Positions 1 to 43,404 of a DNA stretch of 64,000 bases are shown piece after piece. The position numbers and the translations under genes were made by a program. Where the stretch lies: positions 1-64,000 of IMG/VR virus record IMGVR_UViG_3300017917_002466. One strand, given 5' to 3'. The notes under the pieces were generated by a model that made no database searches, had not been told where the DNA came from, and worked only from the letters and a program-made list of their open reading frames with translations. Numbering within the stretch: the first letter of the stretch is position 1; the number at the start of each line of letters is the position of its first letter.

Positions 1-205
1 ACTTGTACCCGCATTAATACTTGTACCCGCACTTATAGTAGTTGCACTTAAACTACTGGATTTAATACTTGTACTATCTATTATACTTGTACCCGCATTA
101 ATACTTGTACCCGCACTTATAGTAGTTGCACTTAAACTACTGGATTTAATACTTGTACCCGCATTAATACTTGTACCCGCACTTATAGTAGTTGCACTTA
201 AACTA
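1..205. repeat. Coding tandem repeat, 66-nt unit (1-66, 85-150, partial 151-205) with an 18-nt spacer unit
   Basis: Nucleotide-identical copies; in frame in the 1..474 ORF. Confidence 0.9.
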
Positions 206-474
206 TTAGTATAACTAGTTGCATTAATATATAAATTATTAGAAGCACTTATATTACCAATTGCTGAAATACCAGTATTTAAAGCACTCAATTTAATACT
301 TTCATTTGTATAAGTTAATATACTATGATTATGATGTGTAACATCATTTATAATTTTTGATCCGCTAGTTGGCATTAATTGTGCAAAAGCTGAAAGTAAA
401 TTAAATTCTCTTTGTGACCAATCTACTGGTTCACCTGGTTGATTTAAACTATATTGATTAACTAATTGTGACAT
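1..474 (-). CDS. Ser/Thr-rich repetitive virion (fibre-like) protein, runs off window edge
   Basis: Not in ORF track. Manual translation from ATG at 474 (RBS TAGGAGG upstream): MSQLVNQYSLNQPGEPVDWSQREF...SLSATTISAGTSINAGTSIKSSSLSATT..., open to base 1. Confidence 0.8.
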   Translation of the reverse strand, partial: MSQLVNQYSLNQPGEPVDWSQREFNLLSAFAQLMPTSGSKIINDVTHHNHSILTYTNESIKLSALNTGISAIGNISASNNLYINATSYTNSLSATTISAGTSINAGTSIKSSSLSATTISAGTSINAGTSIIDSTSIKSSSLSATTISAGTSINAGTS

Positions 475-517: not shown

Positions 518-1402
518 TTACCATTCATTCGAACCAGTTATAGTGATATTTTTTCCTAAAATCATATAATTAAAATCTTGTTTATTAGCTGACCAAGAAG
601 GCCAATGAATAGGAACATTCCATTTATATTGTATATTAGAAGATGAAGTTATTATAACTGTTCCTGATAATTGACTAAGATTTATAGATGGTACTGTATT
701 CCAATTCCATATTGCTGAAATAGCTGAAACTGGAGTTTTTATAAAACCATTTATTCCATCCTGAAAGTTTTGTGATTGAATATAAATTATAGAATCTTTA
801 ATCTGTAATAATGTTGGTTCTCTAAAATCAACATCTAAAATTTTATTTGAACTATCATCTGAAATAATTGTTGAACCAAAAATTCCAAAATATCTTTGTA
901 CATCTCCACAATAATTATTTCTACAATATCCATATCCTACTATTAAAGGAGTTGCTGATGAACTTGGAAAAGACCTTAAAGAAATTCTTTCTGCTTTAAT
1001 AAAACTTGTTTCAATAGCTGAAGTATAAAGCATTATATTTGGAGTGATTTCTTGAACTTCGCTAGAATTTCTAGTATAGTCTGAAACTATAATTCCTCCA
1101 TTAATTTCAATTACTCCATTTAAAGCAATTCTATTTAAAGAATCATATATTGACCAAGGCCCATAAGCAGATAAATCCCAAGCTAAAAGTTTAATTTGAA
1201 AATCAGTATCTTCTTTAAAACTCTTGTTTCCACTAGGGGAACTTGTAATATTCTTTGATCCTCTCAAATATATGTTATCACCATTAGCTACTGTTCCACC
1301 GGAACCACTAACATCGGCGTAAAACTGTAACCAAGTCCAAGGACTTCCAATTGTTCCTGAACCATTTGAAGATGCGCTTAAATTTACATAATAGTTTGAC
1401 AT
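518..1402 (-). CDS. Putative virion structural protein (beta-rich; N-terminal YYVN...GSGT.GSPW motif)
   Basis: ORF in structural operon; shares motifs (GSP/NPxxW, AWDLSAYGPW) with the adjacent 797-aa protein. Confidence 0.55.
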   Translation of the reverse strand: MSNYYVNLSASSNGSGTIGSPWTWLQFYADVSGSGGTVANGDNIYLRGSKNITSSPSGNKSFKEDTDFQIKLLAWDLSAYGPWSIYDSLNRIALNGVIEINGGIIVSDYTRNSSEVQEITPNIMLYTSAIETSFIKAERISLRSFPSSSATPLIVGYGYCRNNYCGDVQRYFGIFGSTIISDDSSNKILDVDFREPTLLQIKDSIIYIQSQNFQDGINGFIKTPVSAISAIWNWNTVPSINLSQLSGTVIITSSSNIQYKWNVPIHWPSWSANKQDFNYMILGKNITITGSNEW

Positions 1403-1405
1403 ATT

Positions 1406-3799
1406 TTATCCACTTGTAATGTACTGATTTCTGTAATATCCAAATAATCCTGTTTCGTAATTTAGGAAATTTGGTGCATTCTTACCTGGATTTGGTGGAA
1501 TTGTTATTTCATTAAAAGGACGAAGCTTTTTCTTATTAGTTCTAATATAGTTAATATCTTTATCATACAAATCATTATTTGGAGTGAATGGATAATCAGT
1601 AGGAGAATTCCATTCATATTGACAATTTTCATCAGCACAAGTTTTGAAATTAGCACTTATATCTACTGCTTTTCTATTAAATGTACTATTATATCTTGCA
1701 ACAGAGCAAGCACTAAAATCTGATGAGGTAATAGTTGTAAAATTAGTAATAACCGAATCAGTTATTTCCATAATATATGAAGATGCACTAACTGCCGAAA
1801 AAGTATTTGAATCAAAATTATCTTTCCAACCATTTCCACTACTAATATATAAAGTTGATCCTATTATACTTGAAGAAGCACTTGGTACAATTCCTCCAAG
1901 GTCTCCACAATAATGACTAAAATATGGATCAATAATAATTTTTGAATATTTTCCTTGATAAACTATAAAAGTATTATATAAATTACTTAATGTAATTTGA
2001 CCACCAGCACTAAGTGAGCTAAATATCTTATTATAAATAATTCCATTTTTAAGAGTACATCCTGCTGCTGAAAGTATTGTATTTCCATCAATATTAGTAA
2101 AATCTTTTATTTCTAATACCCAAGGTCCATATGCAGAAACATCCCAGTCTCTAATAGTAAAATTTTTTCTACGGTCAATATTTAAAACTTTTCTATTTGA
2201 ACTAGAAGCTGAAAGTACTCTTGAACCGCTTAACCTGAATGTATCTGCATACTCTCCACTAGTTTCAACCATCCCTTTAAATTCATTCCAGTTAAATGGA
2301 TTAGCTGATGTTCCAGAATTATTAGCACATACATCATATCCCGAAGTAATATTTACAAAATATTCAACTCCAGATAAATAAATTTTTAAAAATATATCAG
2401 TAGAAATATTAATTGATGAATCTACAGCTGCACTTGCTGTAATATATGGATTTTTAGTACCTGATGTTAAATAATATTCGGTTGGAGAAACTTCTGTTGA
2501 TGATGTACCATTATCAAAATACCAATAATAATTTCCAATTGCTAAACCATCAGAAGAAGCTGCAAATGTTAAATTAGTTAATACTTTTGTACTTCCAAAA
2601 TTTATAGAAATATTTTTACCATTTTGGTCAAAAATATATGGAGTTATATTAAAAGGACCAACAATTATATAAGTAGAAATATTTTTATTATACCATTCAT
2701 TAAATGAAATAATTGATACTGATACATTATATTTATTAGATGCAGAATATGTATGAGATTGTACAGTATTTGTACTAATAGCTGAAATAATTCCATCATT
2801 AAAATTATATGTTGCCGAAGAAGCACTAAAAATAATAAAAGGATTATTACCACTTAAAATAAAACTAACAGGATTTAAAGAAGGTTCATATGCTGTATTA
2901 GCTGATATAGATACTCCACTAATCTCTGGAAAATAAAGGGCGCCAATACCATCTCGTCGTCCACTCATCCAAGTATTAGTATAAAATTTATTTCCTGTTG
3001 CTGAAATAGTAGAAAAAGATGCACTAAGATAATTTAATTGAGAAGTAATATTAATTGCTGAGACTGCACTACTAAAAATTGATGGTCTTGTCCAAGAACT
3101 TTGAATATTAGACCAAGTAGTATTGGATTCTAAATAATTAGTAAAAGCCGATGTTGCACTCGTAAAAGTACAATTATCAATTATAATAGTACCCATATTA
3201 TCAGCTGTCGTTGCCTTAAAATCTGCAATATCAAAAATATTATTAACTAAACTCATTGTCATATTATCTGTTGGAAGAACTGGATCATCAAAAGAATATC
3301 CTTCTAATTTTCCATCCGAAATAACAATAGAGTTTCTTACCAATAAAGCCGTTAAACGACTAAATTTGGCAATACTATTGATCTTCAAATAACAGTTATC
3401 AATAGTTACTGTACCATAATTTCTTGTAAGAATTCTATGAGCACTATCTAAGAAAGCATTATTTGTGGCCGAGCATTTTGCTTGAATTAATAAATCTGTT
3501 ACATTAAATAATGGAGTTTCAAGTTCAAAATAAATACCTTCAGTTGAGTATATTATTGCTGGATTATTTTTATTCCAAGAATAAAAATTAATAGCATTAA
3601 TTGCCGAAAGCGTTATAAATGAGTCTGTATTAAGTGATCTAACTCCAGAAAGATAATAGTTATTTTCAGTAATAATTCCAATATTACTACCACCAGAAAG
3701 TTCAGTTAAAAATTGAGTCCAGTTTAATGGATTACTAGTTGAACCATCTCCATTTGATGAGTAACTATTACTTAGATAAACATATCTATTAGTTGCCAT
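1406..3799 (-). CDS. Virion structural protein with PKD-like domains and two GTSxNPxNW modules
   Basis: PKD-like YxWxFDNG and HTY..S.KYNVSV segments; duplicated N-terminal module; lies after gp6. Confidence 0.6.
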   Translation of the reverse strand: MATNRYVYLSNSYSSNGDGSTSNPLNWTQFLTELSGGSNIGIITENNYYLSGVRSLNTDSFITLSAINAINFYSWNKNNPAIIYSTEGIYFELETPLFNVTDLLIQAKCSATNNAFLDSAHRILTRNYGTVTIDNCYLKINSIAKFSRLTALLVRNSIVISDGKLEGYSFDDPVLPTDNMTMSLVNNIFDIADFKATTADNMGTIIIDNCTFTSATSAFTNYLESNTTWSNIQSSWTRPSIFSSAVSAINITSQLNYLSASFSTISATGNKFYTNTWMSGRRDGIGALYFPEISGVSISANTAYEPSLNPVSFILSGNNPFIIFSASSATYNFNDGIISAISTNTVQSHTYSASNKYNVSVSIISFNEWYNKNISTYIIVGPFNITPYIFDQNGKNISINFGSTKVLTNLTFAASSDGLAIGNYYWYFDNGTSSTEVSPTEYYLTSGTKNPYITASAAVDSSINISTDIFLKIYLSGVEYFVNITSGYDVCANNSGTSANPFNWNEFKGMVETSGEYADTFRLSGSRVLSASSSNRKVLNIDRRKNFTIRDWDVSAYGPWVLEIKDFTNIDGNTILSAAGCTLKNGIIYNKIFSSLSAGGQITLSNLYNTFIVYQGKYSKIIIDPYFSHYCGDLGGIVPSASSSIIGSTLYISSGNGWKDNFDSNTFSAVSASSYIMEITDSVITNFTTITSSDFSACSVARYNSTFNRKAVDISANFKTCADENCQYEWNSPTDYPFTPNNDLYDKDINYIRTNKKKLRPFNEITIPPNPGKNAPNFLNYETGLFGYYRNQYITSG

Positions 3800-3801
3800 T
3801 C

Positions 3802-6486
3802 TTACCTCTTATATTCATAAGTCAGTTGTATATTAATTTTAACTATTTCATTACCAAGAGAATATCCTCCCTTGATAGGCTTCTGATCTGTACTAACTTG
3901 TTCGTCTTTAGCAATATTTCCAAGAGTATCAATTAGGTTATATCTTATAATTTCAAGATAATCTTTTCTAATATCACTTAAAAGATTAATAAAATCATCT
4001 GAATTTGCAAAAATATCTTGGTCATTTGTTATTAATGATAAATAAAGATTTTTTCCAAAAACTTCAAGAAAAGTTCTTTCCGTTATTTCTCTATTCCATT
4101 TAAATGAATATGACTGATTTGTTTTATTTCCATAAACTATTAATTTTTCTTGTGCTCCACTTGTGTCTTCTTGATTAGTACCACTAATATATGCGGAAAG
4201 AGTTTGATTAACAGTAGTATAAATTATACTTCTATTAGCACTATCTTGCTTTTCAATAGAGGGATGACTGATTCCATTATAAAATAATCCACCAGCTGGA
4301 TTAACTGGAACTTCAGGAACAAATTTAATATCAGCATAAAAAACTGATGGAAATTGTTCAATTAGTTCAATAACATTAGATGTATAAATCTCCTTATTAA
4401 AATCTGCATTATCTTCAAACCATTTATAAACCGCATCTTCAATATTTGTCTTTTCGACTTGCTTATCATATAAATCTTTTAAAAATACTTTTCCAATTAA
4501 ATTCATTGACTGAATAATTGGGCTTATATAAATATTTCTAATAGTTACTTGACTTCTTTTATCAAGTTCCTCAACAACATCAATTATCTTTTTACTTAAA
4601 CTTCTATCAGTAGTAACTTCAAAAGAAGCAGCTGAATTAAGTCCCATATCAGAAGCTCCAGTGCCTTCTATTGAATAAATATAAGCGGGAGTATCTAAAT
4701 CGTGAGTAACTATAAACTTTCCAACATCAGCACTATAAGAAACTACTATATTTGGAAAAGCATCACTATTATAATTTGCATTTTTAACTATACTAGTTCC
4801 TCTTAAATCTTTAATACTTTGTAATTTTAAAGTAACTAAAGATGCAAGAAGATTGAGTCCTTCATCATTATTAGTAGTATCATTGTATGCGCTCAATCCT
4901 CTTACATCAACAAAAACTTCAGTTGATGCACTAAGAAGTGGATTATTAGCTACAATACTTGAAGAATATTTAATAGTTAAAGGCATACTCTCACCAAAAG
5001 TTCCTGCAAAATATGGAGCAGTTTTTTCAACTTGATCTCCCATTATTTTCCAAATAAAAGTAGTAGTTGTATATTCTTTAAGTTGTTCAACTAAACTGCT
5101 TTGATCTGTTGCATATCCTTTAGTAAAAACATTAAAATAATTTCTTTGATTTAATTCATCGTCGTCGTATCCATAATCCAAAACAGCAGTATCTAATCCT
5201 GTTTCTTTTGTCTTTACAAAATATGGAGATTTAGTTAAATCATAAAGAGAACCTACAACACTAAAGAAAACTACGTTAAACATTCTCATTAATGCAGTCT
5301 TTCCTCTTTCTTTAAGCTCTTCTTGTTCTCCCCAAGCAATTGCGTTCTTTACATTAATTGGACTTGTTAAGGACTTCAAATAGTTTACATAGTCTCTCTT
5401 TGAAACAAGCCTATCAAGTGTATAATAAATGTTAGGAGCATTGACTCGAATAGATTCAATATCTTCCATATCCGAACCACCAGTAATATTACTTTCAAAA
5501 TAGAAAGTTATATTACTTGTAATATCTTTTCCATTACTATCAAATACTTTACCTGAAAACTGAATCTTTTTATCCTTAACTCCTACCTGATTAGCTTCGG
5601 AACCTTTTGTCGCAAAATATTGAACATAAACATTATCATTAGAAGTTGCTGGAGCTTGTCCTGATGTACTTGCTCCTAGTTGAGTAAATCTACCATCACC
5701 GAATAAAATTTCAACTCCTTCAGTAATAGCTGTTCTTACAACACAAACTTTTTCTGCTACTCCAATAGTAGCTGCATCAATAACTTCCCAGTCAATTAAA
5801 GACCTTCTATTAATACCATATTCTGTTTCATCATTTTTAACGTCACCGACCCATACTTTAGTAATCGGATAATCATAATCATCTTCTCCATATCTATTAC
5901 TAAATTCAGTATCTTCTATTCTATAAATCTGGAAAGTTGAACCTACTTGTGAGTTAGTGGCTCCATCAATAAATTTTTCCTTAATCTCTCCTTGAATAAG
6001 TTCAATTTTATCTCCATTATAATCCTTGGTGATAAAATCAGTTTCTGAATTTTCTGGTAGTGGAGGTAAATCATCGACATTAATTGTCAAAGAATTTTTT
6101 AAAACAAATTTAATTCCATTATATGAAAACACTGCGTGTGCAGGAATTTGAATTGTACCATTACTACTTAAATCTTGTAATGGTCCTTTTATCTTTAGCT
6201 TAATAGTAGCTTCAGCAGGGATTGGTCTTTGAATAACATATCCAAGAGAACGAGCAAGCAACATAACGGAACTGCGAAGACGTGCAGTATCAAAGAAAGA
6301 TTCTTCGGCTCTTCTTTCAAGATTGTAGTTAATAATATCAACTGTTCCTGCGAAAATTTCTACAAGAGTCTGTGCGATAGCCGATTCTCTAAAGTTAGCA
6401 AATCTTTCGTCTGAGTTTAGTTTATCTGTTACTTGACGTACAATTTCATCATACGTCAAACCAGAATACTTCAAGAAGTTTTTCAT
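3802..6486 (-). CDS. gp6: Baseplate wedge subunit (T4 gp6-like)
   Basis: N-terminal ..NYNLERRAEESFFDTARLRSSV..LARSLGY, GGSDMEDIESIRVNAP..RLVSKRDY; follows gp25. Confidence 0.9.
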   Translation of the reverse strand: MKNFLKYSGLTYDEIVRQVTDKLNSDERFANFRESAIAQTLVEIFAGTVDIINYNLERRAEESFFDTARLRSSVMLLARSLGYVIQRPIPAEATIKLKIKGPLQDLSSNGTIQIPAHAVFSYNGIKFVLKNSLTINVDDLPPLPENSETDFITKDYNGDKIELIQGEIKEKFIDGATNSQVGSTFQIYRIEDTEFSNRYGEDDYDYPITKVWVGDVKNDETEYGINRRSLIDWEVIDAATIGVAEKVCVVRTAITEGVEILFGDGRFTQLGASTSGQAPATSNDNVYVQYFATKGSEANQVGVKDKKIQFSGKVFDSNGKDITSNITFYFESNITGGSDMEDIESIRVNAPNIYYTLDRLVSKRDYVNYLKSLTSPINVKNAIAWGEQEELKERGKTALMRMFNVVFFSVVGSLYDLTKSPYFVKTKETGLDTAVLDYGYDDDELNQRNYFNVFTKGYATDQSSLVEQLKEYTTTTFIWKIMGDQVEKTAPYFAGTFGESMPLTIKYSSSIVANNPLLSASTEVFVDVRGLSAYNDTTNNDEGLNLLASLVTLKLQSIKDLRGTSIVKNANYNSDAFPNIVVSYSADVGKFIVTHDLDTPAYIYSIEGTGASDMGLNSAASFEVTTDRSLSKKIIDVVEELDKRSQVTIRNIYISPIIQSMNLIGKVFLKDLYDKQVEKTNIEDAVYKWFEDNADFNKEIYTSNVIELIEQFPSVFYADIKFVPEVPVNPAGGLFYNGISHPSIEKQDSANRSIIYTTVNQTLSAYISGTNQEDTSGAQEKLIVYGNKTNQSYSFKWNREITERTFLEVFGKNLYLSLITNDQDIFANSDDFINLLSDIRKDYLEIIRYNLIDTLGNIAKDEQVSTDQKPIKGGYSLGNEIVKINIQLTYEYKR

Positions 6487-13155: not shown

Positions 13156-13333
13156 GTAAATCAGCTATAGACATATTACCTTGACTCTTCTTAGCTTCTT
13201 CATTTTCCTTATATCTCTGTTCTGCCATTCGTTCATACTTCCAAATTAATTCAAAAAATTCCCAATCATTAAACATTGGTATAATACCCATCGCATAACC
13301 GAGACTAAATTCAACTTCTAATATTTCATTCAA
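13127..13333 (-). CDS. Small tail/baseplate assembly chaperone (TTG start only; possible frameshift extension of upstream gene)
   Basis: ORF overlaps end of the 312-aa chaperone and start of the tape measure gene. Confidence 0.55.
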   Translation of the reverse strand: MNEILEVEFSLGYAMGIIPMFNDWEFFELIWKYERMAEQRYKENEEAKKSQGNMSIADLLGGRSGRQR

Positions 13334-22059: not shown

Positions 22060-23001
22060 TTACGTTATATTTGTAGCACTAGTAAAGTATGCAAAATCTT
22101 TTACATCATCTTTAAAATCTCCACTAAAAGTATAAGTTCCAATTGCTGGGACTGCGCTGGATGGTAATTCTCCCGCTGATGTGTATTTAACCCCTGAAGT
22201 TTCAAAATAATCTGCTGAAATAACTAATCCATTAAAGTCTGATGCAGAAGTATATTGTGCTGACATAACAGCAACAGCCTGTGAAGAATCAACAACAAAA
22301 TATTTACTATTAATAACTTTAATGATCTTACTATATTCAAATGGACGATACATCCAAGATTCAACAGTTAAATCTAAAGTTGCATTAATATATCTTCTTT
22401 CATCATCTGAAATTTCTGATGAAACAAATTCAGGAACTACTCCCGGCATCGTAACTTTCAAATCCCTCTCAACATTCAAAAAGGAAAATTCTTTGACTCT
22501 TAAAAACAAAGCTGGATTAAAATAAGGAAGAATGTTTTCCATTATCTGTGAAAAATAATCCATTGAGTCAACCATAATATGAAGAGTATAATTAATATCC
22601 CAAGGGGTTGGTTGATAATCACGAAGAACTTCATCAACATTGGTTCCATCAACTAATGTTTCTGCAAACCATTCTCTCCACTCATTGACTCCGTATGCTC
22701 TATCTGCATTATAAGCTATTCCATTCATCACCAAGGCCATTCTTGGTGTTGAAATCCAGTATCTCTGGCCATAAGGTTCTACTTGTTTATATCCATTAAT
22801 ATCATTAGCGCTTGCAATATACTCGTGATCTTCAATACGTTGCATATGTTCCTTTTCCATTGGACCAAAAGAAATAGGAACATTATATACATCAGCTGAA
22901 GTACCAGATGATGTATACTTATATACTATAATATCATTGAACATATCCATTAAAGCAACAGTCACATTACGAATTGTGCGTGGATAATAAAAAGTTTTCA
23001 T
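22060..23001 (-). CDS. gp15: Tail terminator / sheath stabiliser
   Basis: FYYPRTIRNVTVALMDMFNDI, VPISFGP, PTPWDINYTL, QIMENILPYFNP. Confidence 0.9.
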   Translation of the reverse strand: MKTFYYPRTIRNVTVALMDMFNDIIVYKYTSSGTSADVYNVPISFGPMEKEHMQRIEDHEYIASANDINGYKQVEPYGQRYWISTPRMALVMNGIAYNADRAYGVNEWREWFAETLVDGTNVDEVLRDYQPTPWDINYTLHIMVDSMDYFSQIMENILPYFNPALFLRVKEFSFLNVERDLKVTMPGVVPEFVSSEISDDERRYINATLDLTVESWMYRPFEYSKIIKVINSKYFVVDSSQAVAVMSAQYTSASDFNGLVISADYFETSGVKYTSAGELPSSAVPAIGTYTFSGDFKDDVKDFAYFTSATNIT

Positions 23002-35775: not shown

Positions 35776-36564
35776 TTACCAATTTGCCCACGGATCACGA
35801 CTTTCACACTCATTCGGTTTTGGTTGATAATTTACTGATGTCTTCTTATCATCTATAGTTTGCTTTATATCAAACTTATCAGTCTTTTTATTCGTAAAAT
35901 CAGCAATAGGAGCCGCCGAAGTAATAGAAGTTGTCGCGATTTTCTCATCTTTAAATGGTTTCACCAAAAACTCCCATACGTGTTGTTTAGATAAAAGATT
36001 CATCATAATTTCATCTTTGACTTCTACTATCTCATAACAGTATTTATTATATTTTGCAAAAATATAATCCCCTGCCTTTGGTATATATGGAGCAAAAGCT
36101 TTTGGATTAGTTTGAATATCGTTATACTGAGAAGATTCCCAAAAATGTCGCTTAGATACATAGATGCTAAAAGAATCCATACCTTCAATTCCAAACTTTG
36201 ACCAAAGTTTTTCTTCCCTTGGAAGATTAAAGAAAGCCATAATCTGGAATCTTCTTTCATATCTTCTGTTATTATCTTCTCCCCAAATCTTATCATAGGA
36301 CTTATCATAACTCGTAACATAGTAGTCCATACATACACCGTGTTTATTATAAGCTTCAGTAACTAACACATCAAAAAGTTCTCTTTCGTTGTTATAATTT
36401 CCGACTGAACCGGCATAACTACTATTTACACACTTAGTTATATACTCATTTGGAATATCCGAGTATTGTAAATAAGTACCAGAAATATTGGAAGCCGATG
36501 ATTCGATTTCTATAATTTCTTCATCAAACCATCCAAGAGTATCTACTGATACAAAGTCTGCCAT
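35776..36564 (-). CDS. gp14: Neck (head completion) protein
   Basis: LVTEAYNKHG..MDYY...DKIWGED, SKFGIEGMD, PKAGDYIF. Confidence 0.85.
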   Translation of the reverse strand: MADFVSVDTLGWFDEEIIEIESSASNISGTYLQYSDIPNEYITKCVNSSYAGSVGNYNNERELFDVLVTEAYNKHGVCMDYYVTSYDKSYDKIWGEDNNRRYERRFQIMAFFNLPREEKLWSKFGIEGMDSFSIYVSKRHFWESSQYNDIQTNPKAFAPYIPKAGDYIFAKYNKYCYEIVEVKDEIMMNLLSKQHVWEFLVKPFKDEKIATTSITSAAPIADFTNKKTDKFDIKQTIDDKKTSVNYQPKPNECESRDPWANW

Positions 36565-39500
36565 TATAACCTTGTCCTTTCGCTACGTTCACTCTCCAAG
36601 GTATACAATGCTGTTGTATTATCTTGCTTATAATAAGTGAATTTATTGTTAATTCTCGTAATTCTACCAGTTGCCATTGCGAGCAATATCTCCATCAATT
36701 CTTCAAAAGTTTTTCCATCAACAGTAGTTGATAATAATGCGGCAATAATAGTATTTGGATCAGCAGAAACAACACCACCAGAAACAAATGAATTAACAAT
36801 ACCAGGTGAATTAAAAGTAAACTGATCTTGTATTGCAATTATACAACTAGCTGAAATTTCATCAATAGTGGAACTTAACGACCAATTTGTATCTCCGTGT
36901 TCTATAATTCCAGCTGATGTTGCGGATAAATCTGATAATGATGCAACTATACCATAATCAACTGAGCTTATATTTACACTTGGAAAGTTCTTATATGCAA
37001 TAGTAGAATTCCAAACTGCTGATGCATCATATTCTGATGTATGAATATGATTTGGAAGAATTACATATCCAGTTGTAGTATCTGGAATTTCTTTCCAAAT
37101 ATGATTAATATAAGCTGTATGAGTTGATCCATCATAAGCTGTTACTAATCCAACCTGATCCTGTCCATAACCTGATCTCAAAAATATTAACTGACCAATA
37201 TAAACATCATCAAAGTCACTTGCCCACTGATTAAGAGATATAGAAGATAATGTTCCAGCTGTTACTCTTCCTTCATTAACGTGTTCTCTACCTGGATGAG
37301 CATAAATGATAAAATCCGATGAAGAATCTGGTATTATCTTCCAATCTCTATCAACAAGGGCAATATGATTAGAACCGTTATACTCAAGAATTAATCTACT
37401 CTGACCTGCTCCTATTCCTCCAACTATTGCAATAAGTGATGGATCATATGCTCCACTATAAGATGCAGCACTTGAGTCTAAAGTTATTGAATTAGAGGTT
37501 GCACTTATTACAACACCACTATAAATAGTTGTTCCCCCAACTGCAACTGATAATTCTCTTAATTTTTTACCAGAAGAATTATTAATATTATGTTTAGCAA
37601 TTGTTAACTCTTCATCCCATACTCCATTAACCATATCAATTTTGGTAGCAGAGGTAAAAGCAGAAACTATAACTTCTGGAAAGTTTTGATATGCACTTAC
37701 ACTTCCATAAACACCATTATTAATACCCGAAATCTGTACTTGTGGAAAGTTTTGATAACCAGAAACTATAACTGGGTTTGTAATAGAATTAACGGTTCCT
37801 GCTGATACTTGGACTTGTGGAAAGTTTTGATAAGCACTAACAATTGTTGGATTAATAACATTATTTATTGTTCCACCTGATACTTGAACTGTTCCACTTA
37901 TATTAATGCTTGGAAAATTCTGGTAAGCAGAAACGACTACTGCATTTGTTACATTATTTACAGTTCCACTTATTACCGTATAGTTCATCTTATCAAGATT
38001 TGCACTTACTGTAACTTGAGGCATATTTTGATATGCACTTACACTTCCATAAACACCAGTATTGATTCCGGATACTTGAACTTGTGGAAAGTTCTGGTAC
38101 GCAGAAACTATTACAGCACCAGGAAGAATAATTTCATTAACTGAATAAGCTTCAACAGCTGAACCATTAAAAACAAATGATTCTTCAATAGCTGATATTG
38201 AAGCATTTTTTATTGCAACATAATCTATTATAGTTGTTGCAGAAATTTCAATACCACTATTAATTCCAGATACTTGAACTTGTGGAAAGTTCTGATAAGC
38301 GGATACTGTTATAGGATTAATTACGTTATTAATAGTTCCACTAGAAACTGTATAATTTGTTTTATCTAAATTAGCTGATACTGAAACTTGAGGAAAGTTA
38401 GTATAAGCTGATGTTCCAATGTATAGTCCTCCATTAACACCTGATACTTGAACTCTTGGAAAATTTTGATAAGCTGATACTATAACTGGATTAGTTATAT
38501 TATTAATAGTTCCGCTTGAAACTGTATAATTTATTTTATCTAAATTAGCGGATACTGTGACTTGAGGAAAATTCTGATAACCAGAAACTATAACTGGGTT
38601 TGTAATAGAATTAACGGTTCCTGCTGATACTTGGACTTGTGGAAAGTTCTGGTACGCAGATGTTCCAACAAATAAACCTCCATTTATAGCTGATACTGTA
38701 ACTTGTGGGAAGTTCGTATATGCACTAACTGTAACTGAATTTGCCAAAGAATATCCTGTCTTATCGTTATTAGTTCCAACGGTGACTGGGTTTGTAACAG
38801 TAGAAACTGTTCCACTAGAAACAGTATAGTTTATCTTATCCAAGTTAGCTGATACAGTTACCTGTGGGAAGTTAGAATATGCTGAAACAGTCTTTTCTTC
38901 TCTAGATACATTTTCAATTGTCTTTTCAACTGAATTAGTTCCAATTGAAATAGTTGAAGCATCAAATTCTCTAACTGCTCTTGCAATAACGTCTTTATTA
39001 ATATTAGTATTTGCAAGTTCCATTGTACCTGGAGCTTGAGCATAAACTGTAATTACTCTACCATAATGAAGTTCCTTGGTATTTTCTTTAAGAGCAAAAT
39101 CAATAACTATTTCGTCTGGAAGAACAAAAGCCGATGTTGCAAACTTATAATAAGTTTGCCAAACACCTACTCCTGCGCTTGTCATTGCATAATAATCGCC
39201 GCTAAATGTTGGTGAAATTGATGCGTGAACTGATCCAGAAATATCATTATAAAATTCTGTAAGTGCTATAATTTGTCTTACTGAATTTGCTTCAATAGCA
39301 ATTTCACCATCAGGATTCTCCATTGTACCACTCATATTATAAAAATAAACTTTGATTTCATAAATCTGTGAACCAGAGATTGGTACAATAACTTCCGTAG
39401 GAACTGCGGCTACAAATCTTGTATTTTGAATAATAGAAGCAACATCTGTTTGGCTTGCAATTTGACCAACTGGAAGTTTGCTCTGAATTTCATTTGTATC

Positions 39501-42176
39501 AGTAAGGATTGCTCCAGTATCTGCTGAAATCTGATTTACAGTTGTCTGTACATCAGATGTAGCAAGTCCAAGCTGTACTCTGGTCCAATAGTTTGCTCCA
39601 AATTCAGCACTTGTTAATGCTCCATCAGTAACTGCGTTAGATGTAATTACGTTATTTGCCATATTACCAACGCTAACACTTAATCTTCCACCCACAACCT
39701 GAGTAGCTGTTAATGCAGTTCCTCCTGCTTGTCTTAAATCTGCTGAAAGAGGAACTGTAGTTGAAGAAACTTGAACTTGTGGAAAGTTTTGATAAGCAGA
39801 TACAATAACAGGATTTGTAACCGTGTTTATTATTCCGCTAGAAACTGTATAGTTAGTCTTATCTCCATTAGCAGAAACATATACTTGTGGAAAGTTTTGA
39901 TAAGCTGATACTGTTATAGGATTAATTACGTTATTAATATTACCACCAGAAACATAGACTTGTGGGAAGTTCTGATAAGCTGAGACTGTAACTGGAATTG
40001 TATTATCATATCTTGCACTACTAGTGATAATAACTCCTGTTCCATTGTTAGTAACTTGCCAGAATCCTCTTAATGTTAAGTCTCCACCGGAACAACTTGA
40101 AGCAATAACTACTCTTCCAGCACCATCTAGCTTAATGGAGTTAGAAGATATCATATTATTAAATTGAATTCCTCCACGATAATCTCTAAATGCCATTGTT
40201 GCACTTGGTGTACAAACAAATGTTGGTGAAGCCAATCCCGCTGGATTTGCGTCAATACATCTTTTAAAAACATATACTCCATTTGCACAAGTAGTAAATG
40301 TTCCATTAAATTCGCTATTGTGAATACTTCCAGAATCTAGTGTAACATCTCCAATAGCACAATCATCCATTACATAGTCTTGACCAACTGATGTTCCAGA
40401 AATCCATTCTACATTTTCAAAAGATGCATCAGCAATACTTTGACCATTTAATCCAATAATTGCTCTTCCAATAAATCTCCACGCATCATAAGCAGAAACA
40501 AGAACTATACTAGAGTCTGGCTTCAAATAGAATCTCTTTAAATTAATTTGTTGTGCTAAATTTAATGCATTTGCTAGATTATTAGAAGGATATGTAGAAA
40601 TACCATTGACTCCAAGGGTAGTTCCTGAGAATCCATTAATGGTATCAATCCATATTCCATTATCATAAACTACCATTCCCATCTTGTTATAAACTGCATT
40701 AGCAATATCGGTAACGGATGTACCAGCTGCTACTGCATTCATAATTACATAATCTAAATTTAATATATCATTTGTATTAGTTCTTCCTGCTACAAATAAT
40801 ATTTGGGAATTTCCAGTTGAATTAACATGAGTTGTTGAATTTAACACATAGGAATATGTTGAATTAGAAGTTCCATTAAGAATTGCAGTACTAGCATTAC
40901 TAATTAATTCATATGCTGATGTTATATAATTGTATGCGTGGACATTAACTATACCCGCATTAGTTGGTGTACCAGCTTGTAAATATCCATAAATTGAAAT
41001 AGTAGATGGAACCCTTGTGCCTAAATTAAAAGTTAAACTTGCAGATAGTGGGACTGTTCCACTTGTTTGAATTTTCCATAAACTTCCATCATTAGCAGAG
41101 GTATTTAAATAAGAACCGGACAAATTTGTTCCGCCAATTACTGATCCTCCATTTGCTGTTAATGATGATGCATTATTAGAAACAATTTGATTATAAATTC
41201 CTTTTAATGAATTAGCAGAAATAAAAGTACTTCCAGTACTTCCATCAGCTATTTGTTGTAACATTCCTGCAATAGTAGATGTTCCACCATTCAAAGAAAC
41301 TGGAGTTCCTATTCCAATTTTATTCCAATAGTCTATTGCATAATCAGCTGAAGTAATTGATCCATCTGTAACAGAAGATACATTTACTGATGGAAAATTT
41401 GTATAGGCGGATGTTCCAACAAATAAACCTCCATTTATAGCTGATACTGTAACTTGTGGAAAGTTTGTATAAGCGGATACTGCAACAATTGGATGATTAG
41501 TTTGAGCGGATACAGAAACAGAATTAACAACTCCGTTAACTGTTCCTGCAACATTTCCAGTAACTGAACCAACTGATCCGGTTACGTTTCCAGCAACTGC
41601 TGTTATAGAACCGCTTGAAACTGTATAATTTGTTTTGTCTAAATTAGCTGATACCGTAACTTGTGGATGGTTTAAATATGCTGATGTTCCAACAAATAAA
41701 CCTCCATTTATAGCTGATACCGTAACTTGTGGATGGTTTAAATATGCTGATGTTCCAACAAATAAACCTCCATTTATAGCTGATACCGTAACTTGTGGGA
41801 AGTTCTGATATGCTGAAATAGTTAATGGACTACTTACTGTATCAATAGAAGCATCATAATTAGTTATTCTTATTAAAATAGTTTGTTCAAGAACTTGATC
41901 TGATTTTAACTTAATTGACATATAATCAGACGATGCAGAAATTTCAGAAGCTGAAATAACCAAATACCATTTTCCAGTCGAACCAAGTTGAATTGGATTT
42001 GCTGCAATTGTTGATGAAGTAGGCGCACTGGCATCGTCTGACCATAAATAAACTGATTTACTTGCATTAGTCATTGATGTCCAAGCGCTTGTCGTATAGT
42101 ACTGTGTTGCGCTTGCGGCATTTATTAAAGGAAAGACAACTTTTGTGGCTTGAGACCTTTTTCTGCTAACTTCCAT
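36564..42176 (-). CDS. Large repetitive virion appendage/fibre protein (1870 aa)
   Basis: About 22 copies of SAY(Q/T)NFPQV; adjacent to neck gene; duplicated domain near C-terminus. Confidence 0.75.
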   Translation of the reverse strand: MEVSRKRSQATKVVFPLINAASATQYYTTSAWTSMTNASKSVYLWSDDASAPTSSTIAANPIQLGSTGKWYLVISASEISASSDYMSIKLKSDQVLEQTILIRITNYDASIDTVSSPLTISAYQNFPQVTVSAINGGLFVGTSAYLNHPQVTVSAINGGLFVGTSAYLNHPQVTVSANLDKTNYTVSSGSITAVAGNVTGSVGSVTGNVAGTVNGVVNSVSVSAQTNHPIVAVSAYTNFPQVTVSAINGGLFVGTSAYTNFPSVNVSSVTDGSITSADYAIDYWNKIGIGTPVSLNGGTSTIAGMLQQIADGSTGSTFISANSLKGIYNQIVSNNASSLTANGGSVIGGTNLSGSYLNTSANDGSLWKIQTSGTVPLSASLTFNLGTRVPSTISIYGYLQAGTPTNAGIVNVHAYNYITSAYELISNASTAILNGTSNSTYSYVLNSTTHVNSTGNSQILFVAGRTNTNDILNLDYVIMNAVAAGTSVTDIANAVYNKMGMVVYDNGIWIDTINGFSGTTLGVNGISTYPSNNLANALNLAQQINLKRFYLKPDSSIVLVSAYDAWRFIGRAIIGLNGQSIADASFENVEWISGTSVGQDYVMDDCAIGDVTLDSGSIHNSEFNGTFTTCANGVYVFKRCIDANPAGLASPTFVCTPSATMAFRDYRGGIQFNNMISSNSIKLDGAGRVVIASSCSGGDLTLRGFWQVTNNGTGVIITSSARYDNTIPVTVSAYQNFPQVYVSGGNINNVINPITVSAYQNFPQVYVSANGDKTNYTVSSGIINTVTNPVIVSAYQNFPQVQVSSTTVPLSADLRQAGGTALTATQVVGGRLSVSVGNMANNVITSNAVTDGALTSAEFGANYWTRVQLGLATSDVQTTVNQISADTGAILTDTNEIQSKLPVGQIASQTDVASIIQNTRFVAAVPTEVIVPISGSQIYEIKVYFYNMSGTMENPDGEIAIEANSVRQIIALTEFYNDISGSVHASISPTFSGDYYAMTSAGVGVWQTYYKFATSAFVLPDEIVIDFALKENTKELHYGRVITVYAQAPGTMELANTNINKDVIARAVREFDASTISIGTNSVEKTIENVSREEKTVSAYSNFPQVTVSANLDKINYTVSSGTVSTVTNPVTVGTNNDKTGYSLANSVTVSAYTNFPQVTVSAINGGLFVGTSAYQNFPQVQVSAGTVNSITNPVIVSGYQNFPQVTVSANLDKINYTVSSGTINNITNPVIVSAYQNFPRVQVSGVNGGLYIGTSAYTNFPQVSVSANLDKTNYTVSSGTINNVINPITVSAYQNFPQVQVSGINSGIEISATTIIDYVAIKNASISAIEESFVFNGSAVEAYSVNEIILPGAVIVSAYQNFPQVQVSGINTGVYGSVSAYQNMPQVTVSANLDKMNYTVISGTVNNVTNAVVVSAYQNFPSINISGTVQVSGGTINNVINPTIVSAYQNFPQVQVSAGTVNSITNPVIVSGYQNFPQVQISGINNGVYGSVSAYQNFPEVIVSAFTSATKIDMVNGVWDEELTIAKHNINNSSGKKLRELSVAVGGTTIYSGVVISATSNSITLDSSAASYSGAYDPSLIAIVGGIGAGQSRLILEYNGSNHIALVDRDWKIIPDSSSDFIIYAHPGREHVNEGRVTAGTLSSISLNQWASDFDDVYIGQLIFLRSGYGQDQVGLVTAYDGSTHTAYINHIWKEIPDTTTGYVILPNHIHTSEYDASAVWNSTIAYKNFPSVNISSVDYGIVASLSDLSATSAGIIEHGDTNWSLSSTIDEISASCIIAIQDQFTFNSPGIVNSFVSGGVVSADPNTIIAALLSTTVDGKTFEELMEILLAMATGRITRINNKFTYYKQDNTTALYTLESERSERTRL
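41645..41798. repeat. 66-nt exact tandem repeat inside the 1870-aa gene
   Basis: Period 66 (starts 41645, 41711, 41777). Confidence 0.85.
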
Positions 42177-42225: not shown

Positions 42226-43404
42226 TTATCCTATTCCTACCCAAACTCCACGACCAACTCCTTCCCAAATTCCACGAAAATAAAAATTAATTGATTCTAC
42301 CTCTATTGTTTCAACTGTTCCAACTGTCCAAAAGTTTGTATTATTATTTTCATAATTATAAATTGTTTTAATCCAGTTTGCATTAACTAATCCTTTTCTA
42401 ATTCTTATTTCATCAATAGTTGCTCCAAATCCTCCGTCTTGTTCACCTACACCAGTTGTAGTATGTCTTCCAATTGCTTCATTAACATTAGTTAATGGTT
42501 CAGTAATAACATTAAGTCCAGCTGCACTATTAACAAAATTTCCATTAATGTACCATAATCCATTTTTTAGTCCAGTTCTATTATCTAAAACAAAATCCAT
42601 TTTATACCAAGTATTAATATTCCATGATGCACAAGTACATGCTATTACGTTCAAATCTTCTCCATTATAATATTGAAATTTTGGCGCACCATCTTCATCA
42701 AAATAAATCCAAAAATGTTCATTAGTAGTACTCCCTTTACTAATTACATTTTTAAGTTTACCAACTAATGTTGTTGAATTCCAAGCTGCATGTGGTTTTA
42801 TCCACCATTGCCAAGATGATACATTTCCACTTGTAATTAAATTACCTGCTTTTAATTGAGTATTTGCACTTAATCCTAAACCAGTATCATTATCACCACT
42901 AAAAGCACTACCAATAAATCCAGAAGTAAATTTTGAAGCTGCCGTATTTAATATTCTAGCATTATGTCCATAAACTGATTCAACAACATTCATTGTATTT
43001 GAGCTTGTACCAGATTGAAGATGCCATACTCTTAAATAGGTTGGATTCCAAACTAAAGAATATCCGTATGTATTTCCGCTTGATGGTTGAGTACTACTAG
43101 GGTCTCCCCAATATAGATAAAAGTCATTAGTAGCAGAAGAACCAGAAACATTTAATGAACCAGATGTAGTAAAATAAACTTGTCCTGTTTTTGCTGTAGT
43201 ATTGATATACACTATTTCAAGTGGACATCTTACTAATCCACTTGGAGAATTCCAATATACTAAAAGATCATCACCATTTGATTTTATATTACTCCAAAAT
43301 TGATTTGCTGAAATATTAGAAAGTTCAAATTCTAATGGTAAATTAGCTGAATTAGAAAGAACAAGATTATTATTAGTTGTAATCTTAACTCTATTAATTG
43401 GCAT
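42226..43404 (-). CDS. DUF2341-like plus LamG/ConA-like virion protein
   Basis: NGDDLLVY...EIVY, FYLYWGDPS, VWHLQ; GATIDEIRI...WIKTIYN. Confidence 0.75.
   Translation of the reverse strand: MPINRVKITTNNNLVLSNSANLPLEFELSNISANQFWSNIKSNGDDLLVYWNSPSGLVRCPLEIVYINTTAKTGQVYFTTSGSLNVSGSSATNDFYLYWGDPSSTQPSSGNTYGYSLVWNPTYLRVWHLQSGTSSNTMNVVESVYGHNARILNTAASKFTSGFIGSAFSGDNDTGLGLSANTQLKAGNLITSGNVSSWQWWIKPHAAWNSTTLVGKLKNVISKGSTTNEHFWIYFDEDGAPKFQYYNGEDLNVIACTCASWNINTWYKMDFVLDNRTGLKNGLWYINGNFVNSAAGLNVITEPLTNVNEAIGRHTTTGVGEQDGGFGATIDEIRIRKGLVNANWIKTIYNYENNNTNFWTVGTVETIEVESINFYFRGIWEGVGRGVWVGIG

What the first reader, a model, noticed from the sequence alone, without database searches (positions are those of the whole stretch)
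1406..3799. Directional Ser-Ala bias across virion proteins: candidate modification sequon
Seen: by hand count the 797-aa protein has 25 SA dipeptides, roughly half of its Ala residues. The bias recurs in the 1..474 ORF, the 294-aa and 1870-aa proteins, and in insertions in gp15 (MSAQYTSASD, ISAD, TSAG) and gp14 (ESSAS, TSAAP). It is not evident in replication proteins. Known: virion O-glycosylation by phage glycosyltransferases is reported for mycobacteriophages. Inference: S-(A/G) may be a selected glycosylation or other modification site on the virion surface; a glycosyltransferase is encoded at 53376..54575.
Basis: partly seen in the sequence, partly recalled or inferred. Interest (0 to 1): 0.6.

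Follow-up and report, generated by a model that had tools for sequence, protein, structure and literature searches.

The report
Ser-Ala motif in phage fibres
The tail-fibre and neck-appendage proteins of an uncultured clade of large T4-like phages carry three to five times more [I/L/V/T]-Ser-(Ala/Gly) tripeptides than chance predicts, a bias absent from T4, a cyanophage and cellular relatives of the same domains; it may mark sugar-attachment sites, but that is unproven.

Summary
The 797-aa protein has 25 SA against 6.6 expected (z 8). The 1870-aa protein has 62 against 19 (z 11). AS, TA and GA are flat.

The full motif is [I/L/V/T]-Ser-(Ala>Gly). It is strictly Ser (Thr is under-represented), uses mixed codons, and is enriched only in the coding frame.

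It is not a property of virion proteins in general: capsid, portal and the gp6-like and gp5-like baseplate proteins are flat. It is confined to the fibre cluster after the gp6-like gene, a giant repeat protein at the neck-fibre position, a LamG-domain protein and the C-terminal tail of gp15.

It is a clade trait (dozens of metagenomic contigs, GC 24–43%). It is absent from T4, cyanophage P-SSM2, two complete outgroup genomes and 119 cellular PKD homologues, so the folds do not require it.

The cited glycosyltransferase is a clade-conserved soluble GT-B beside gp47. It co-occurs with the motif (6 of 6 carriers, 0 of 3 non-carriers; one blind prediction held), but all carriers form one clade.

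An O-glycosylation sequon is the leading hypothesis (about 0.4) but unproven. A structural idiom is the main rival.

The parts
1..474 (-). N-terminal part of a fibre-like protein with tandem units (LSATTISAGTSINAGTSI...). It runs off the contig end. Joined through the 41-bp terminal overlap it becomes a 313-aa ORF.
   Evidence: 10 SA vs 3.2 expected. The joined ORF has 16 SA vs about 5.3. The overlap lies inside the repeat, so copy number is uncertain.
518..1402 (-). 294-aa fibre protein, a paralogue of the C-terminal domain of the 797-aa protein.
   Evidence: 7 SA vs 1.8, z = 4.3. 24% identical to residues 480-756 of the 797-aa protein. 45% identical orthologue in G001, also SA-biased.
1406..3799 (-). 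797-aa fibre protein: a beta-rich N-terminal domain, a linker, two PKD/Ig-like domains (about residues 296-475) and a C-terminal domain. It carries 25 SA sites.
   Evidence: z = 8.1. All 24 homologues keep the bias, z = 2.7-10.5 and above 5 in 23 of 24. AF2 model pLDDT 85.7. PKD/Ig fold matches.
3802..6486 (-). gp6-like baseplate wedge protein. It anchors the fibre cluster and is not itself SA-biased.
   Evidence: phrog_219 E = 1.6e-42. 7 SA vs 3.9. Used as the syntenic marker.
22060..23001 (-). gp15 tail-sheath stabiliser. Its clade-specific C-terminal tail (about 22060-22284) is built from T-S-(A/G) motifs.
   Evidence: PF16724 E = 5.5e-38 over residues 5-240. 8 SA vs 1.8. The ISAD, TSAG, TSA[VIL]P and FTSAT sites are conserved in G000-G003 and absent from T4 and P-SSM2. 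A and G interchange across the clade.
35776..36564 (-). gp14 neck protein (head closure Hc2).
   Evidence: phrog_679 E = 2.2e-15. Only 2 SA vs 1.2 expected, not significant.
36564..42176 (-). 1870-aa giant repeat protein at the wac/gp13 position, a candidate neck or whisker fibre. Nearly every 11-, 14-, 22- or 25-residue unit starts with S-A (sometimes S-G) and ends in V-x-V.
   Evidence: 62 SA vs 19.2, z = 10.8. Unit structure. Four homologues keep the SAYxNFPQVxV and SGxxxGLxxGT units, with z up to 15. No Pfam or PHROG match.
42226..43404 (-). 392-aa concanavalin-like (Laminin_G_3) protein next to the giant fibre, moderately SA-biased.
   Evidence: PF13385 E = 8.7e-10. 6 SA vs 1.8, z = 3.3.
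53376..54575 (+). 399-aa soluble GT-B (GT4-like) glycosyltransferase beside the gp46/gp47-like recombination genes.
   Evidence: phrog_7162 E = 5e-20. Atlas neighbours carry Glyco_trans_1_4 and are nearly all viral. Orthologues: 75% in G001, 54% in G010, 46% in G018, 44% in G016; absent from the complete genome G017. No hydrophobic segment. Not an AGT family member, and the genome has no thymidylate-synthase-family hydroxymethylase.

Best explanation
Shown. An uncultured clade of large T4-like myoviruses keeps a short linear motif, [I/L/V/T]-Ser-(Ala>Gly), at 3-5 times the chance frequency. The motif is found in its external appendage proteins: the tail-fibre cluster after the gp6-like gene, a giant repeat protein at the neck-fibre position, a lectin-like neighbour of that protein, and the C-terminal tail of gp15. 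It is selected at the protein level, is strictly Ser rather than Thr, and has been laid over unrelated folds, including PKD domains whose cellular relatives read L-T-V/A where the phage reads L-S-A.

Inferred. The motif is the acceptor site (sequon) for O-glycosylation of Ser by soluble phage-encoded glycosyltransferases acting in the cytoplasm, before or during fibre assembly. Candidate priming enzymes are the clade-conserved 399-aa GT-B and the conserved GT2 / GT4-like pair. The variable island next to the fibre genes (GT2, GT11, a GT17-methyltransferase fusion, methyltransferases, an acyltransferase and radical-SAM enzymes) would then extend and tailor the glycan. The result would be sugar-coated fibres and neck appendages.
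For: - Directional, Ser-specific motif: SA 151 vs 48.9, with AS, TA and GA flat. In [ILVT]-X-A contexts X is Ser in 57% of cases and Thr is at 0.59x. After [ILVT]-S, Ala is at 5.8x and Gly at 2.2x.
- Protein-level selection: mixed codon pairs; enrichment only in the coding frame, 151 vs 49.5; the same bias in genomes of 24-43% GC.
- Not intrinsic to the folds: 119 cellular PKD homologues have 602 SA vs 708 expected. Phage PKD domains carry 2.3 SA each against 0.5 in cellular ones, with T->S at the F strand. T4 fibres and the whole P-SSM2 genome are flat. P-SSM2 giant proteins show only a 1.4x baseline, equal for phi-S and phi-T.
- The motif sits in unlinked, non-homologous proteins: fibres, the 11-mer repeat protein and the gp15 tail.
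- Glycosylation capacity: at least 9 glycosyltransferase domains plus tailoring enzymes lie beside the fibre genes in G000. A conserved GT cassette is present in G001-G003. A Gmd / GT2 / GT11 / methyltransferase island starts 1.6 kb after the fibres in G014.
- No phage-encoded polytopic membrane protein, and mostly soluble glycosyltransferases. No hydroxymethylase for a DNA-sugar pathway.
- The GT-B co-occurs with the motif in 6 of 6 carriers and 0 of 3 non-carriers. G018, chosen only because it carries the GT-B, turned out strongly motif-positive.
Against: - There is no direct evidence that any Ser is modified.
- All GT-B carriers belong to one clade, so the co-occurrence is not a set of independent events.
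- G016 carries the GT-B but has no SA bias, only a weaker S-G form (z = 5.1).
- Motif-negative outgroups G016 and G017 also have GT2 genes beside their fibres. From my own memory (Sullivan et al. 2005), P-SSM2 carries glycosyltransferase/LPS gene clusters; it shows no bias.
- The GT-B lies among replication and recombination genes, not virion genes.
- Cytoplasmic phage proteins do not avoid the motif.
- In the giant protein, S-A holds a fixed place in a structural repeat.
- Capsid, portal and the gp6-like and gp5-like baseplate proteins lack the motif.
- G001's 1543-aa protein at the neck-fibre position is rich in S and A but depleted in SA (6 vs 18.9).
Confidence: 0.4

Rival explanations
1. 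Structural idiom. phi-S-(A/G) is a strand-terminating or turn-starting cap: Ser acts as a polar cap on the outer face and Ala/Gly as the small inward residue. The clade's beta-rich fibre architectures favour it, and it has no chemical modification.
For: - Hydrophobic residues at -1 and -3 fit an amphipathic beta strand.
- In the giant protein, S-A opens every repeat unit. In the low-confidence model it forms the last two residues of the predicted strand in 15 of 17 units.
- SAxSA pairs coincide with short helical turns in the confident 797-aa model, where Ser could act as an N-cap.
- Several sites are positionally conserved.
- A weak generic phi-(S/T)-(G/A) preference of about 1.4x exists in P-SSM2 giant proteins.
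Against: - The same PKD fold in 119 cellular proteins, plus T4 and cyanophage fibres, does without the motif.
- Thr, the better strand former, is excluded, whereas the generic baseline treats S and T alike.
- In the confident 797-aa model the 25 sites lie in mixed contexts. By my reading of the DSSP string, 11 of 25 lie within 2 residues of a strand end, against about 35% expected by chance.
- The motif spans unrelated folds and a probably flexible tail.
Confidence: 0.25
2. A recognition motif for something other than glycosylation. Candidates are a clade-specific fibre chaperone or assembly factor that binds phi-S-A in unfolded chains, or another Ser modification such as phosphorylation, acylation or radical-SAM chemistry.
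For: - The linear, fold-independent, Ser-specific character of the motif.
- Radical-SAM, methyltransferase and acyltransferase genes lie beside the fibre cluster.
- Small conserved ORFs lie inside the fibre cluster.
- From my own knowledge: T4-like fibres need dedicated chaperones.
Against: - No candidate kinase or chaperone was identified.
- The radical-SAM and methyltransferase genes lie within a glycan island and vary between genomes, which suits sugar tailoring better.
- 25-60 sites per protein is many for a chaperone signal.
Confidence: 0.15
3. An inherited quirk. The SA-rich proteins descend from a pool of fibre modules that exchange among these phages and happen to carry this composition, and the motif has no present function.
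For: - The N- and C-terminal domains of the 797-aa protein, the 294-aa protein and G001's 763-aa protein are paralogues.
- Motif-positive and motif-negative fibres are interleaved among phages with similar gp6 proteins, as module exchange would give.
- G006 has a motif-bearing gp15 tail but motif-free fibres.
Against: - The bias is kept at z = 5-20 across divergence down to about 26-40% identity and GC from 24 to 43%, while individual sites turn over.
- It appears in families that are not detectably homologous: PKD domains, the 11-mer repeat protein and the gp15 tail.
- PKD domains shifted towards it, relative to their cellular kin.
Confidence: 0.15
4. A DNA-level or codon-level artefact, such as a nucleotide motif, a mutational bias or an overlapping frame.
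For: None found.
Against: - At least 14 different codon pairs encode SA.
- The SA-coding hexamers are enriched only in frame 0 (151 vs 49.5) and not in other frames or on the antisense strand.
- The bias persists from 24 to 43% GC.
Confidence: 0.01

Closest known systems
Mycobacteriophage virion glycosylation (Freeman et al. 2023, Cell Host Microbe; cited in PMC12582341; details from my own memory, since the paper was not held)
   Same: Phage-encoded glycosyltransferases are proposed to modify virion proteins in the cytoplasm. Acceptor segments include terminal extensions of structural proteins, which compares with the gp15 tail here.
   Different: - There the targets are capsid and tail-tube subunits of siphoviruses. 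Here capsid, portal and the gp6-like and gp5-like baseplate proteins lack the motif, and fibres and neck appendages carry it.
- No Ser-Ala sequon is known to me for those phages.
- Modification is shown there and only inferred here.
Serine-rich-repeat adhesins glycosylated by GtfA/GtfB (a GT4, GT-B O-GlcNAc transferase of Gram-positive cocci)
   Same: A soluble GT-B enzyme glycosylates Ser in the cytoplasm, on a fibrillar surface protein rich in S-A/V/T dipeptides.
   Different: - SRR tracts are long alternating runs (SASASA...), so AS equals SA. Here SASA is avoided (spacing 2: 2 observed vs 11 expected) and AS is flat.
- Sequence search against solved structures gave no match to GtfA.
AIDA-I / TibA / Ag43 autotransporters heptosylated by Aah/TibC (BAHT family)
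   Same: Many Ser residues in short, repeated beta-helical units of an adhesin are glycosylated in the cytoplasm. Recognition depends on a local strand-loop context, with a small residue after the Ser.
   Different: - Different enzyme family, with no match found here.
- 19-residue repeats there, against 11-mer units, PKD domains and globular domains here.
- Bacterial rather than viral.
General O-glycosylation of Bacteroidota, sequon D-(S/T)-(A/I/L/V/M/T)
   Same: A three-residue O-glycosylation sequon with Ala allowed after the hydroxy amino acid.
   Different: Position -1 here is I/L/V/T, not Asp. Thr is excluded. That system acts in the periplasm, whereas phage fibres are made in the cytoplasm.
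Chlorovirus and mimivirus virus-encoded glycosylation machineries
   Same: A large virus-encoded toolkit of soluble glycosyltransferases, GT-methyltransferase fusions, fucose-type enzymes and methyltransferases, with atypical acceptor sites on capsid or fibril proteins.
   Different: Those are eukaryotic giant viruses with N-linked (chlorovirus) or fibril glycans. No homology was tested beyond shared Pfam families.
T4 alpha/beta-glucosyltransferases (DNA hydroxymethylcytosine glucosylation)
   Same: T4's alpha-gt gene lies beside gene 47, the same position as the GT-B here, and the protein size is similar (T4 facts from my own memory).
   Different: No match to the AGT family. The genome has no thymidylate-synthase-family hydroxymethylase.

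Membership tests
Phage virion protein O-glycosylation system | Phage-encoded glycosyltransferases are present. | tested here: met
   The GT-B at 53376-54575. Outside the window: three GT2, two GT11, a GT17-methyltransferase fusion, a GT2+GT4 fusion and a GT4-like protein.
Phage virion protein O-glycosylation system | Glycan covalently attached to virion proteins (mass shift, glycostain). | not testable with these tools
Phage virion protein O-glycosylation system | Presence of the enzyme tracks presence of the acceptor motif across phages. | tested here: inconclusive
   GT-B carriers have the motif in 6 of 6 cases (weak, S-G form in G016) and non-carriers in 0 of 3, and the blind pick G018 was positive. 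All carriers form one clade, and motif-negative genomes also hold GT2 genes.
SRRP / GtfA-GtfB O-GlcNAc system | Long alternating Ser-X dipeptide tracts. | tested here: not met
   SASA is depleted (spacing 2: 2 vs 11.3 expected) and AS is not enriched.
SRRP / GtfA-GtfB O-GlcNAc system | A GtfA-type enzyme with its GtfB partner. | tested here: not met
   No GtfA chain appears among solved-structure sequence matches at E <= 1. No partner was identified.
Bacteroidota general O-glycosylation sequon | Asp at -1, and Ser or Thr as the acceptor. | tested here: not met
   Position -1 is I/L/V/T in 73% of non-redundant sites, and D is not among the common residues there. Thr is at 0.59x.
T4-type DNA glucosyltransferase (AGT) | An AGT-family fold and sequence, plus a hydroxymethyl-pyrimidine pathway. 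| tested here: not met
   PF11440 gave no match, although that search's control genomes also gave none. PF00303 gave no match and its controls were positive.
PKD domain (PF00801 / PF18911) | A profile match and an Ig-like fold. | tested here: met
   - The 506-aa and 554-aa cluster proteins score above the curated cut-off.
- The 797-aa protein scores just below it, but its model matches PKD/Ig structures.
- The SA bias is not a family feature.
T4 gp15 tail-sheath stabiliser (PF16724) | A profile match over the core. | tested here: met
   E = 5.5e-38 over residues 5-240. The SA-rich tail lies outside the profile.

The most novel reading that the evidence does not exclude
A whole clade of large T4-like phages decorates its tail fibres, neck fibre and neck proteins with O-linked glycans, at a genetically encoded sequon [I/L/V/T]-Ser-(Ala/Gly). 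A conserved soluble GT-B (or the GT2 / GT4-like pair) primes the sites, and a hypervariable island of glycosyltransferases, methyltransferases and radical-SAM enzymes beside the fibre genes diversifies the glycan. This would be the first sequon defined for a phage protein-glycosylation system and the first such system in T4-like myoviruses. With 25-60 sites per protein, the receptor-binding apparatus would effectively be sugar-coated.
Probability: 0.35. Interest if true: 0.85.

Novelty: new variant of a known kind. Interest (0 to 1): 0.65.

Why it matters
If the motif is a sequon, glycosylated virion proteins could be read directly from phage genomes. Phage protein glycosylation would extend from actinobacteriophages to the T4-like lineage and to receptor-binding fibres. 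That has consequences for host recognition, protease and immune shielding, and phage engineering. The variable glycan island beside the fibres would then be a second layer of host-range or defence-evasion diversity, comparable to O-antigen variation.

Even if the motif turns out to be structural, it is unusual. A strictly directional, Ser-only dipeptide rule has been imposed convergently on unrelated folds and kept across deep divergence. That gives a simple sequence signature for recognising this clade's appendage proteins, most of which have no family annotation.

Tried and rejected
- **T4 late-promoter mapping (TATAAATA), to time the glycosyltransferase genes.** The motif is not enriched in this AT-rich genome (84 found vs about 76 expected), so it is unusable.
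- **Ser codon-family switching (TCN/AGY) at conserved SA columns.** 1 of 9 SA columns is mixed, against 8 of 22 for other Ser columns. Uninformative.
- **Strand-end position rule in the confident 797-aa model.** By my reading of the DSSP string, 11 of 25 sites lie within 2 residues of a strand end, against about 35% expected by chance. Not significant.
- **AF2 of the 11-mer repeat array.** pLDDT 40, used only as a hint.
- **Complex prediction of the GT-B with the gp15 tail.** The daily limit had been reached, so it was not run.
- **Foldseek of the 797-aa model against PDB and BFVD.** Only the PKD/Ig tandem was placed. The N- and C-terminal domains remain unassigned.
- **Cultured relatives.** No phage in the isolate collection carries the fibre family, and none carries a close GT-B.
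- **Motif-negative fragments G006-G009 as negative cases for glycosyltransferase content.** Their downstream regions are not on the contigs.
- **The genome search on metagenome records.** Not possible.
- **Literature.** No report of a Ser-Ala sequon or of fibre glycosylation in T4-like phages in the held library. The key mycobacteriophage paper is not held.
- **DNA-level, repeat-only and paralogy-only explanations.** Considered and rejected.
- Not used.
Full report
**Context**

The window is the first 64 kb of a 253,664-bp single-contig virus record with 33% GC. It is a deep-branching, uncultured T4-like myovirus. It has a gp15 tail-sheath stabiliser (PF16724, E = 5.5e-38), a gp6-like wedge protein, a gp14 neck protein, a portal and a gp5-like hub-lysozyme protein. 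Its major capsid protein is only about 34% identical to cyanophage gp23. No isolate in the phage collection shares its DNA or its fibre proteins.

**The observation**

The 797-aa protein (1406-3799, minus strand) has 25 SA and 8 AS. From its 108 Ser and 49 Ala, 6.6 SA are expected (z = 8.1), and no shuffle out of 2000 reaches 25. Other proteins in the window:

| Protein | SA observed vs expected | z |
|---|---|---|
| 1870-aa protein | 62 vs 19.2 | 10.8 |
| ORF 1-474 | 10 vs 3.2 | 4.4 |
| 294-aa protein | 7 vs 1.8 | 4.3 |
| gp15 | 8 vs 1.8 | 5.0 |
| LamG-domain protein (42226-43404) | 6 vs 1.8 | 3.3 |

- Further biased proteins lie at the other end of the contig, at 243.9-253.1 kb. The two ends join through a 41-bp overlap that lies inside the tandem repeat of ORF 1-474. 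The joined ORF is 313 aa with 16 SA against about 5.3 expected.
- Pooled over the fibre-like set, SA is 151 vs 48.9 (z = 15.4), the strongest of all 400 dipeptides. AS, TA and GA are flat or low. The remaining roughly 350 ORFs give 210 vs 200.6.
- Repeats explain only part of this: 120 non-redundant contexts remain against about 49 expected.
- BLAST finds almost no paralogy among the biased proteins.
- Capsid, portal and the gp6-like and gp5-like baseplate proteins are flat. "Virion proteins" is therefore too broad; "external appendages" fits.

**Anatomy of the motif**

- Position -1 is I, L, V or T in 73% of non-redundant sites, and -3 tends to be hydrophobic.
- In [ILVT]-X-A contexts, X is Ser in 57% of cases and Thr is at 0.59x. 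After [ILVT]-S, Ala is at 5.8x and Gly at 2.2x. About 40% of all Ala in these proteins follow a Ser.
- At least 14 different codon pairs encode SA.
- The SA-coding hexamer is enriched only in the coding frame, 151 vs 49.5 after codon shuffling. Selection therefore acts on the protein.
- Spacings of 3 and 5 between sites are twice the expected number, and spacing 2 (SASA) is avoided.
- In the 1870-aa protein, S-A (sometimes S-G) opens almost every 11-, 14-, 22- or 25-residue unit, for example SAYQNFPQVTV and SAINGGLFVGT. Its four metagenomic relatives keep these units.
- That protein lies directly upstream of gp14, at the position of T4's wac and gene 13. It is therefore a candidate neck or whisker fibre (the T4 gene order is).

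**Structure**

- An AlphaFold model of the 797-aa protein, built from 24 homologues, is confident (pLDDT 85.7). It shows a beta-rich N-terminal domain, a linker, two PKD/Ig-like domains (fold matches) and a C-terminal domain.
- The 25 SA sites lie in mixed contexts: strand ends, strand interiors, short helical turns and coil. None is significantly preferred.
- The model of the repeat array is poor (pLDDT 40). Its periodic strands do end in S-A in 15 of 17 mapped units.

**Is the motif intrinsic to the folds? No.**

- T4's baseplate and fibre proteins are all flat.
- So is the whole 252-kb cyanophage P-SSM2 genome: 346 SA, 344 AS, 351 expected, and no biased ORF.
- 119 cellular PKD-repeat homologues of the phage's 4xPKD protein have 602 SA against 708 expected, and none exceeds z = 3.
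- Aligned PKD domains show cellular L-T-V/A (T 83%) where the phage has L-S-A (S 77%, A 77%). That is 2.3 SA per phage domain against 0.5 per cellular domain.
- P-SSM2's giant proteins show only a generic 1.4x preference, equal for phi-S-(A/G) and phi-T-(A/G).

**Distribution**

- All 24 homologues of the 797-aa protein keep the bias, with z above 5 in 23 of 24. Some sites are conserved (247, 299, 325, 328, 339, 555, 577, 640) and others turn over.
- Genome-wide scans of G001 (264 kb, 43% GC), G002 (29% GC) and G003 (35% GC) find the bias in the cluster after the gp6-like gene and in gp15.
- The gp15 sites are conserved in all four genomes and absent from T4 and P-SSM2. The gp15 tail is a run of T-S-(A/G) motifs in which A and G interchange across the clade.
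- 13 of 14 viral loci, about half of a second subclade and at least 19 further metagenome loci with GC 24-42% are positive.
- Negative cases exist. The L013 subclade has the same gp25/gp6/fibre synteny but no motif in its fibres. G017 is complete, 151 kb, and flat.
- G016, complete at 158 kb, has no SA bias genome-wide (112 vs 127). Its fibres do carry a weaker, Ser-specific S-G form of the motif: phi-S-(A/G) 17 vs 6, z = 5.1.

**The glycosyltransferase question**

- The cited enzyme (53376-54575) is a soluble GT-B of the GT4-like kind, from a nearly virus-only family.
- It lies directly after the gp46-like gene, a homing endonuclease and the gp47-like gene. In G001 it is 75% identical, against a genome median of 53%.
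- It is not an AGT family member, and the genome has no thymidylate-synthase-family hydroxymethylase, so T4-style DNA glucosylation is unlikely.
- Its orthologues are found in motif-positive G001, G005, G010 and G018 and in the weakly positive G016. It is absent from the complete, motif-free G017. It has no BLAST match at E <= 1e-5 in P-SSM2. For T4 it was not searched directly; the annotated half of T4 seen here lists no such gene.
- G018 was picked only because it carries the enzyme, and it proved strongly positive: SA 68 vs 19, z = 12.4, and gp15 6 vs 1.1.
- This gives 6 of 6 against 0 of 3, but all carriers form one clade, so it counts as one evolutionary observation rather than nine.

- At 208-230 kb, co-oriented with the fibre cluster, lies a roughly 22-kb glycan island. 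It holds a GT2+GT4 fusion, three GT2, two GT11, a GT17-methyltransferase fusion, O- and C-methyltransferases, a hexapeptide acyltransferase, two radical-SAM enzymes, DUF3431 and DUF5672 proteins, and a GT4-like 268-aa protein.
- A core of GT4-like, GT2, GT2 and GT11 genes is shared with G001 and G003, and partly with G002. It always lies a few kb from the fibres. The rest of the island varies between genomes.
- In the distant positive phage G014, an island of GDP-mannose 4,6-dehydratase, a 1097-aa GT2 protein, a GT47-like protein, a GT11 and methyltransferases starts 1.6 kb after the last SA-rich fibre gene.
- None of G000, G001 or G018 encodes a polytopic membrane protein, so the phage brings no flippase, polymerase or oligosaccharyltransferase of its own.
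- Against a specific link: the motif-negative or weak genomes G016 and G017 also carry GT2 genes next to their fibres. From my own memory (Sullivan et al. 2005), P-SSM2 carries glycosyltransferase/LPS gene clusters.

**Weighing**

- The DNA-level, repeat-only, paralogy-only and fold-intrinsic explanations are excluded.
- What remains is a clade-specific selective force acting on a linear, Ser-only tripeptide in external appendages.
- An O-glycosylation sequon fits that description best and has mechanistic precedents: cytoplasmic GT-B enzymes acting on Ser in fibrous adhesins, and mycobacteriophage virion glycosylation. I put it at about 0.4.
- The other readings cannot be excluded without biochemistry or a structure: a structural capping idiom (about 0.25), another recognition or modification role (about 0.15) and an inherited module quirk (about 0.15).
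- No membership in a known glycosylation system is claimed. The SRRP, Bacteroidota-sequon and T4 AGT definitions were tested and are not met.

Noticed in passing
Outside the window: G000 208161-229998, minus strand (loci L066, L067): A roughly 22-kb glycan-biosynthesis island beside the fibre cluster. It holds a GT2+GT4 fusion, three GT2, two GT11, a GT17-methyltransferase fusion, O- and C-methyltransferases, a hexapeptide acyltransferase, a B12-binding radical-SAM enzyme and a second radical-SAM enzyme, and DUF3431 and DUF5672 proteins. Its gene content is mosaic between related phages.
   Followed up: partly
window 58396-59751 and 60684-62081 (+), with ORF 59770-60711 between them: The family-B DNA polymerase appears split into two ORFs, N-terminal/exonuclease and C-terminal/polymerase parts, separated by a 313-aa ORF of unknown function.
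   Followed up: no
window 51419-52318 (+) and 35027-35755 (-): An HNH homing-endonuclease gene lies between the gp46-like (SbcC/Rad50-like) and gp47-like (SbcD-like) genes. An endonuclease VII-like ORF lies next to gp14. Both look like mobile insertions in conserved modules.
   Followed up: no
window 1-41 and genome 253624-253664: The 41-bp 'direct terminal repeat' lies inside the tandem repeat of the fibre ORF 1-474. It may therefore be an assembly overlap of a circularly permuted genome, and the repeat copy number at the junction is uncertain.
   Followed up: partly
G001 168885-173516 (loci L027 and neighbours): At the neck-fibre position G001 has a non-homologous 1543-aa protein that is rich in Ser and Ala but depleted in SA (6 vs 18.9 expected). 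Not every appendage of the clade uses the motif.
   Followed up: no
L068-L070 (record G002), position 511-1800 of each locus: An IS605-type OrfB/TnpB (Cas12f-like) gene is inserted just upstream of the 791-aa fibre gene in one relative.
   Followed up: no
window 21510-22046 (-): A 178-aa small-terminase-like protein, not a surface protein, has 4 SA vs 0.7 expected (z = 4.3). The numbers are small, but it is an exception to the 'appendages only' pattern.
   Followed up: no
G016 11651-13243 (locus L219): The gp15 orthologue of this outgroup is 530 aa, against about 300 aa elsewhere. It has a long extra region and lacks the T-S-(A/G) tail.
   Followed up: no
window, whole: No tRNA genes in the 64-kb window. 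The T4 late-promoter consensus TATAAATA is not over-represented genome-wide, so this lineage's late promoters may differ from T4's.
   Followed up: partly
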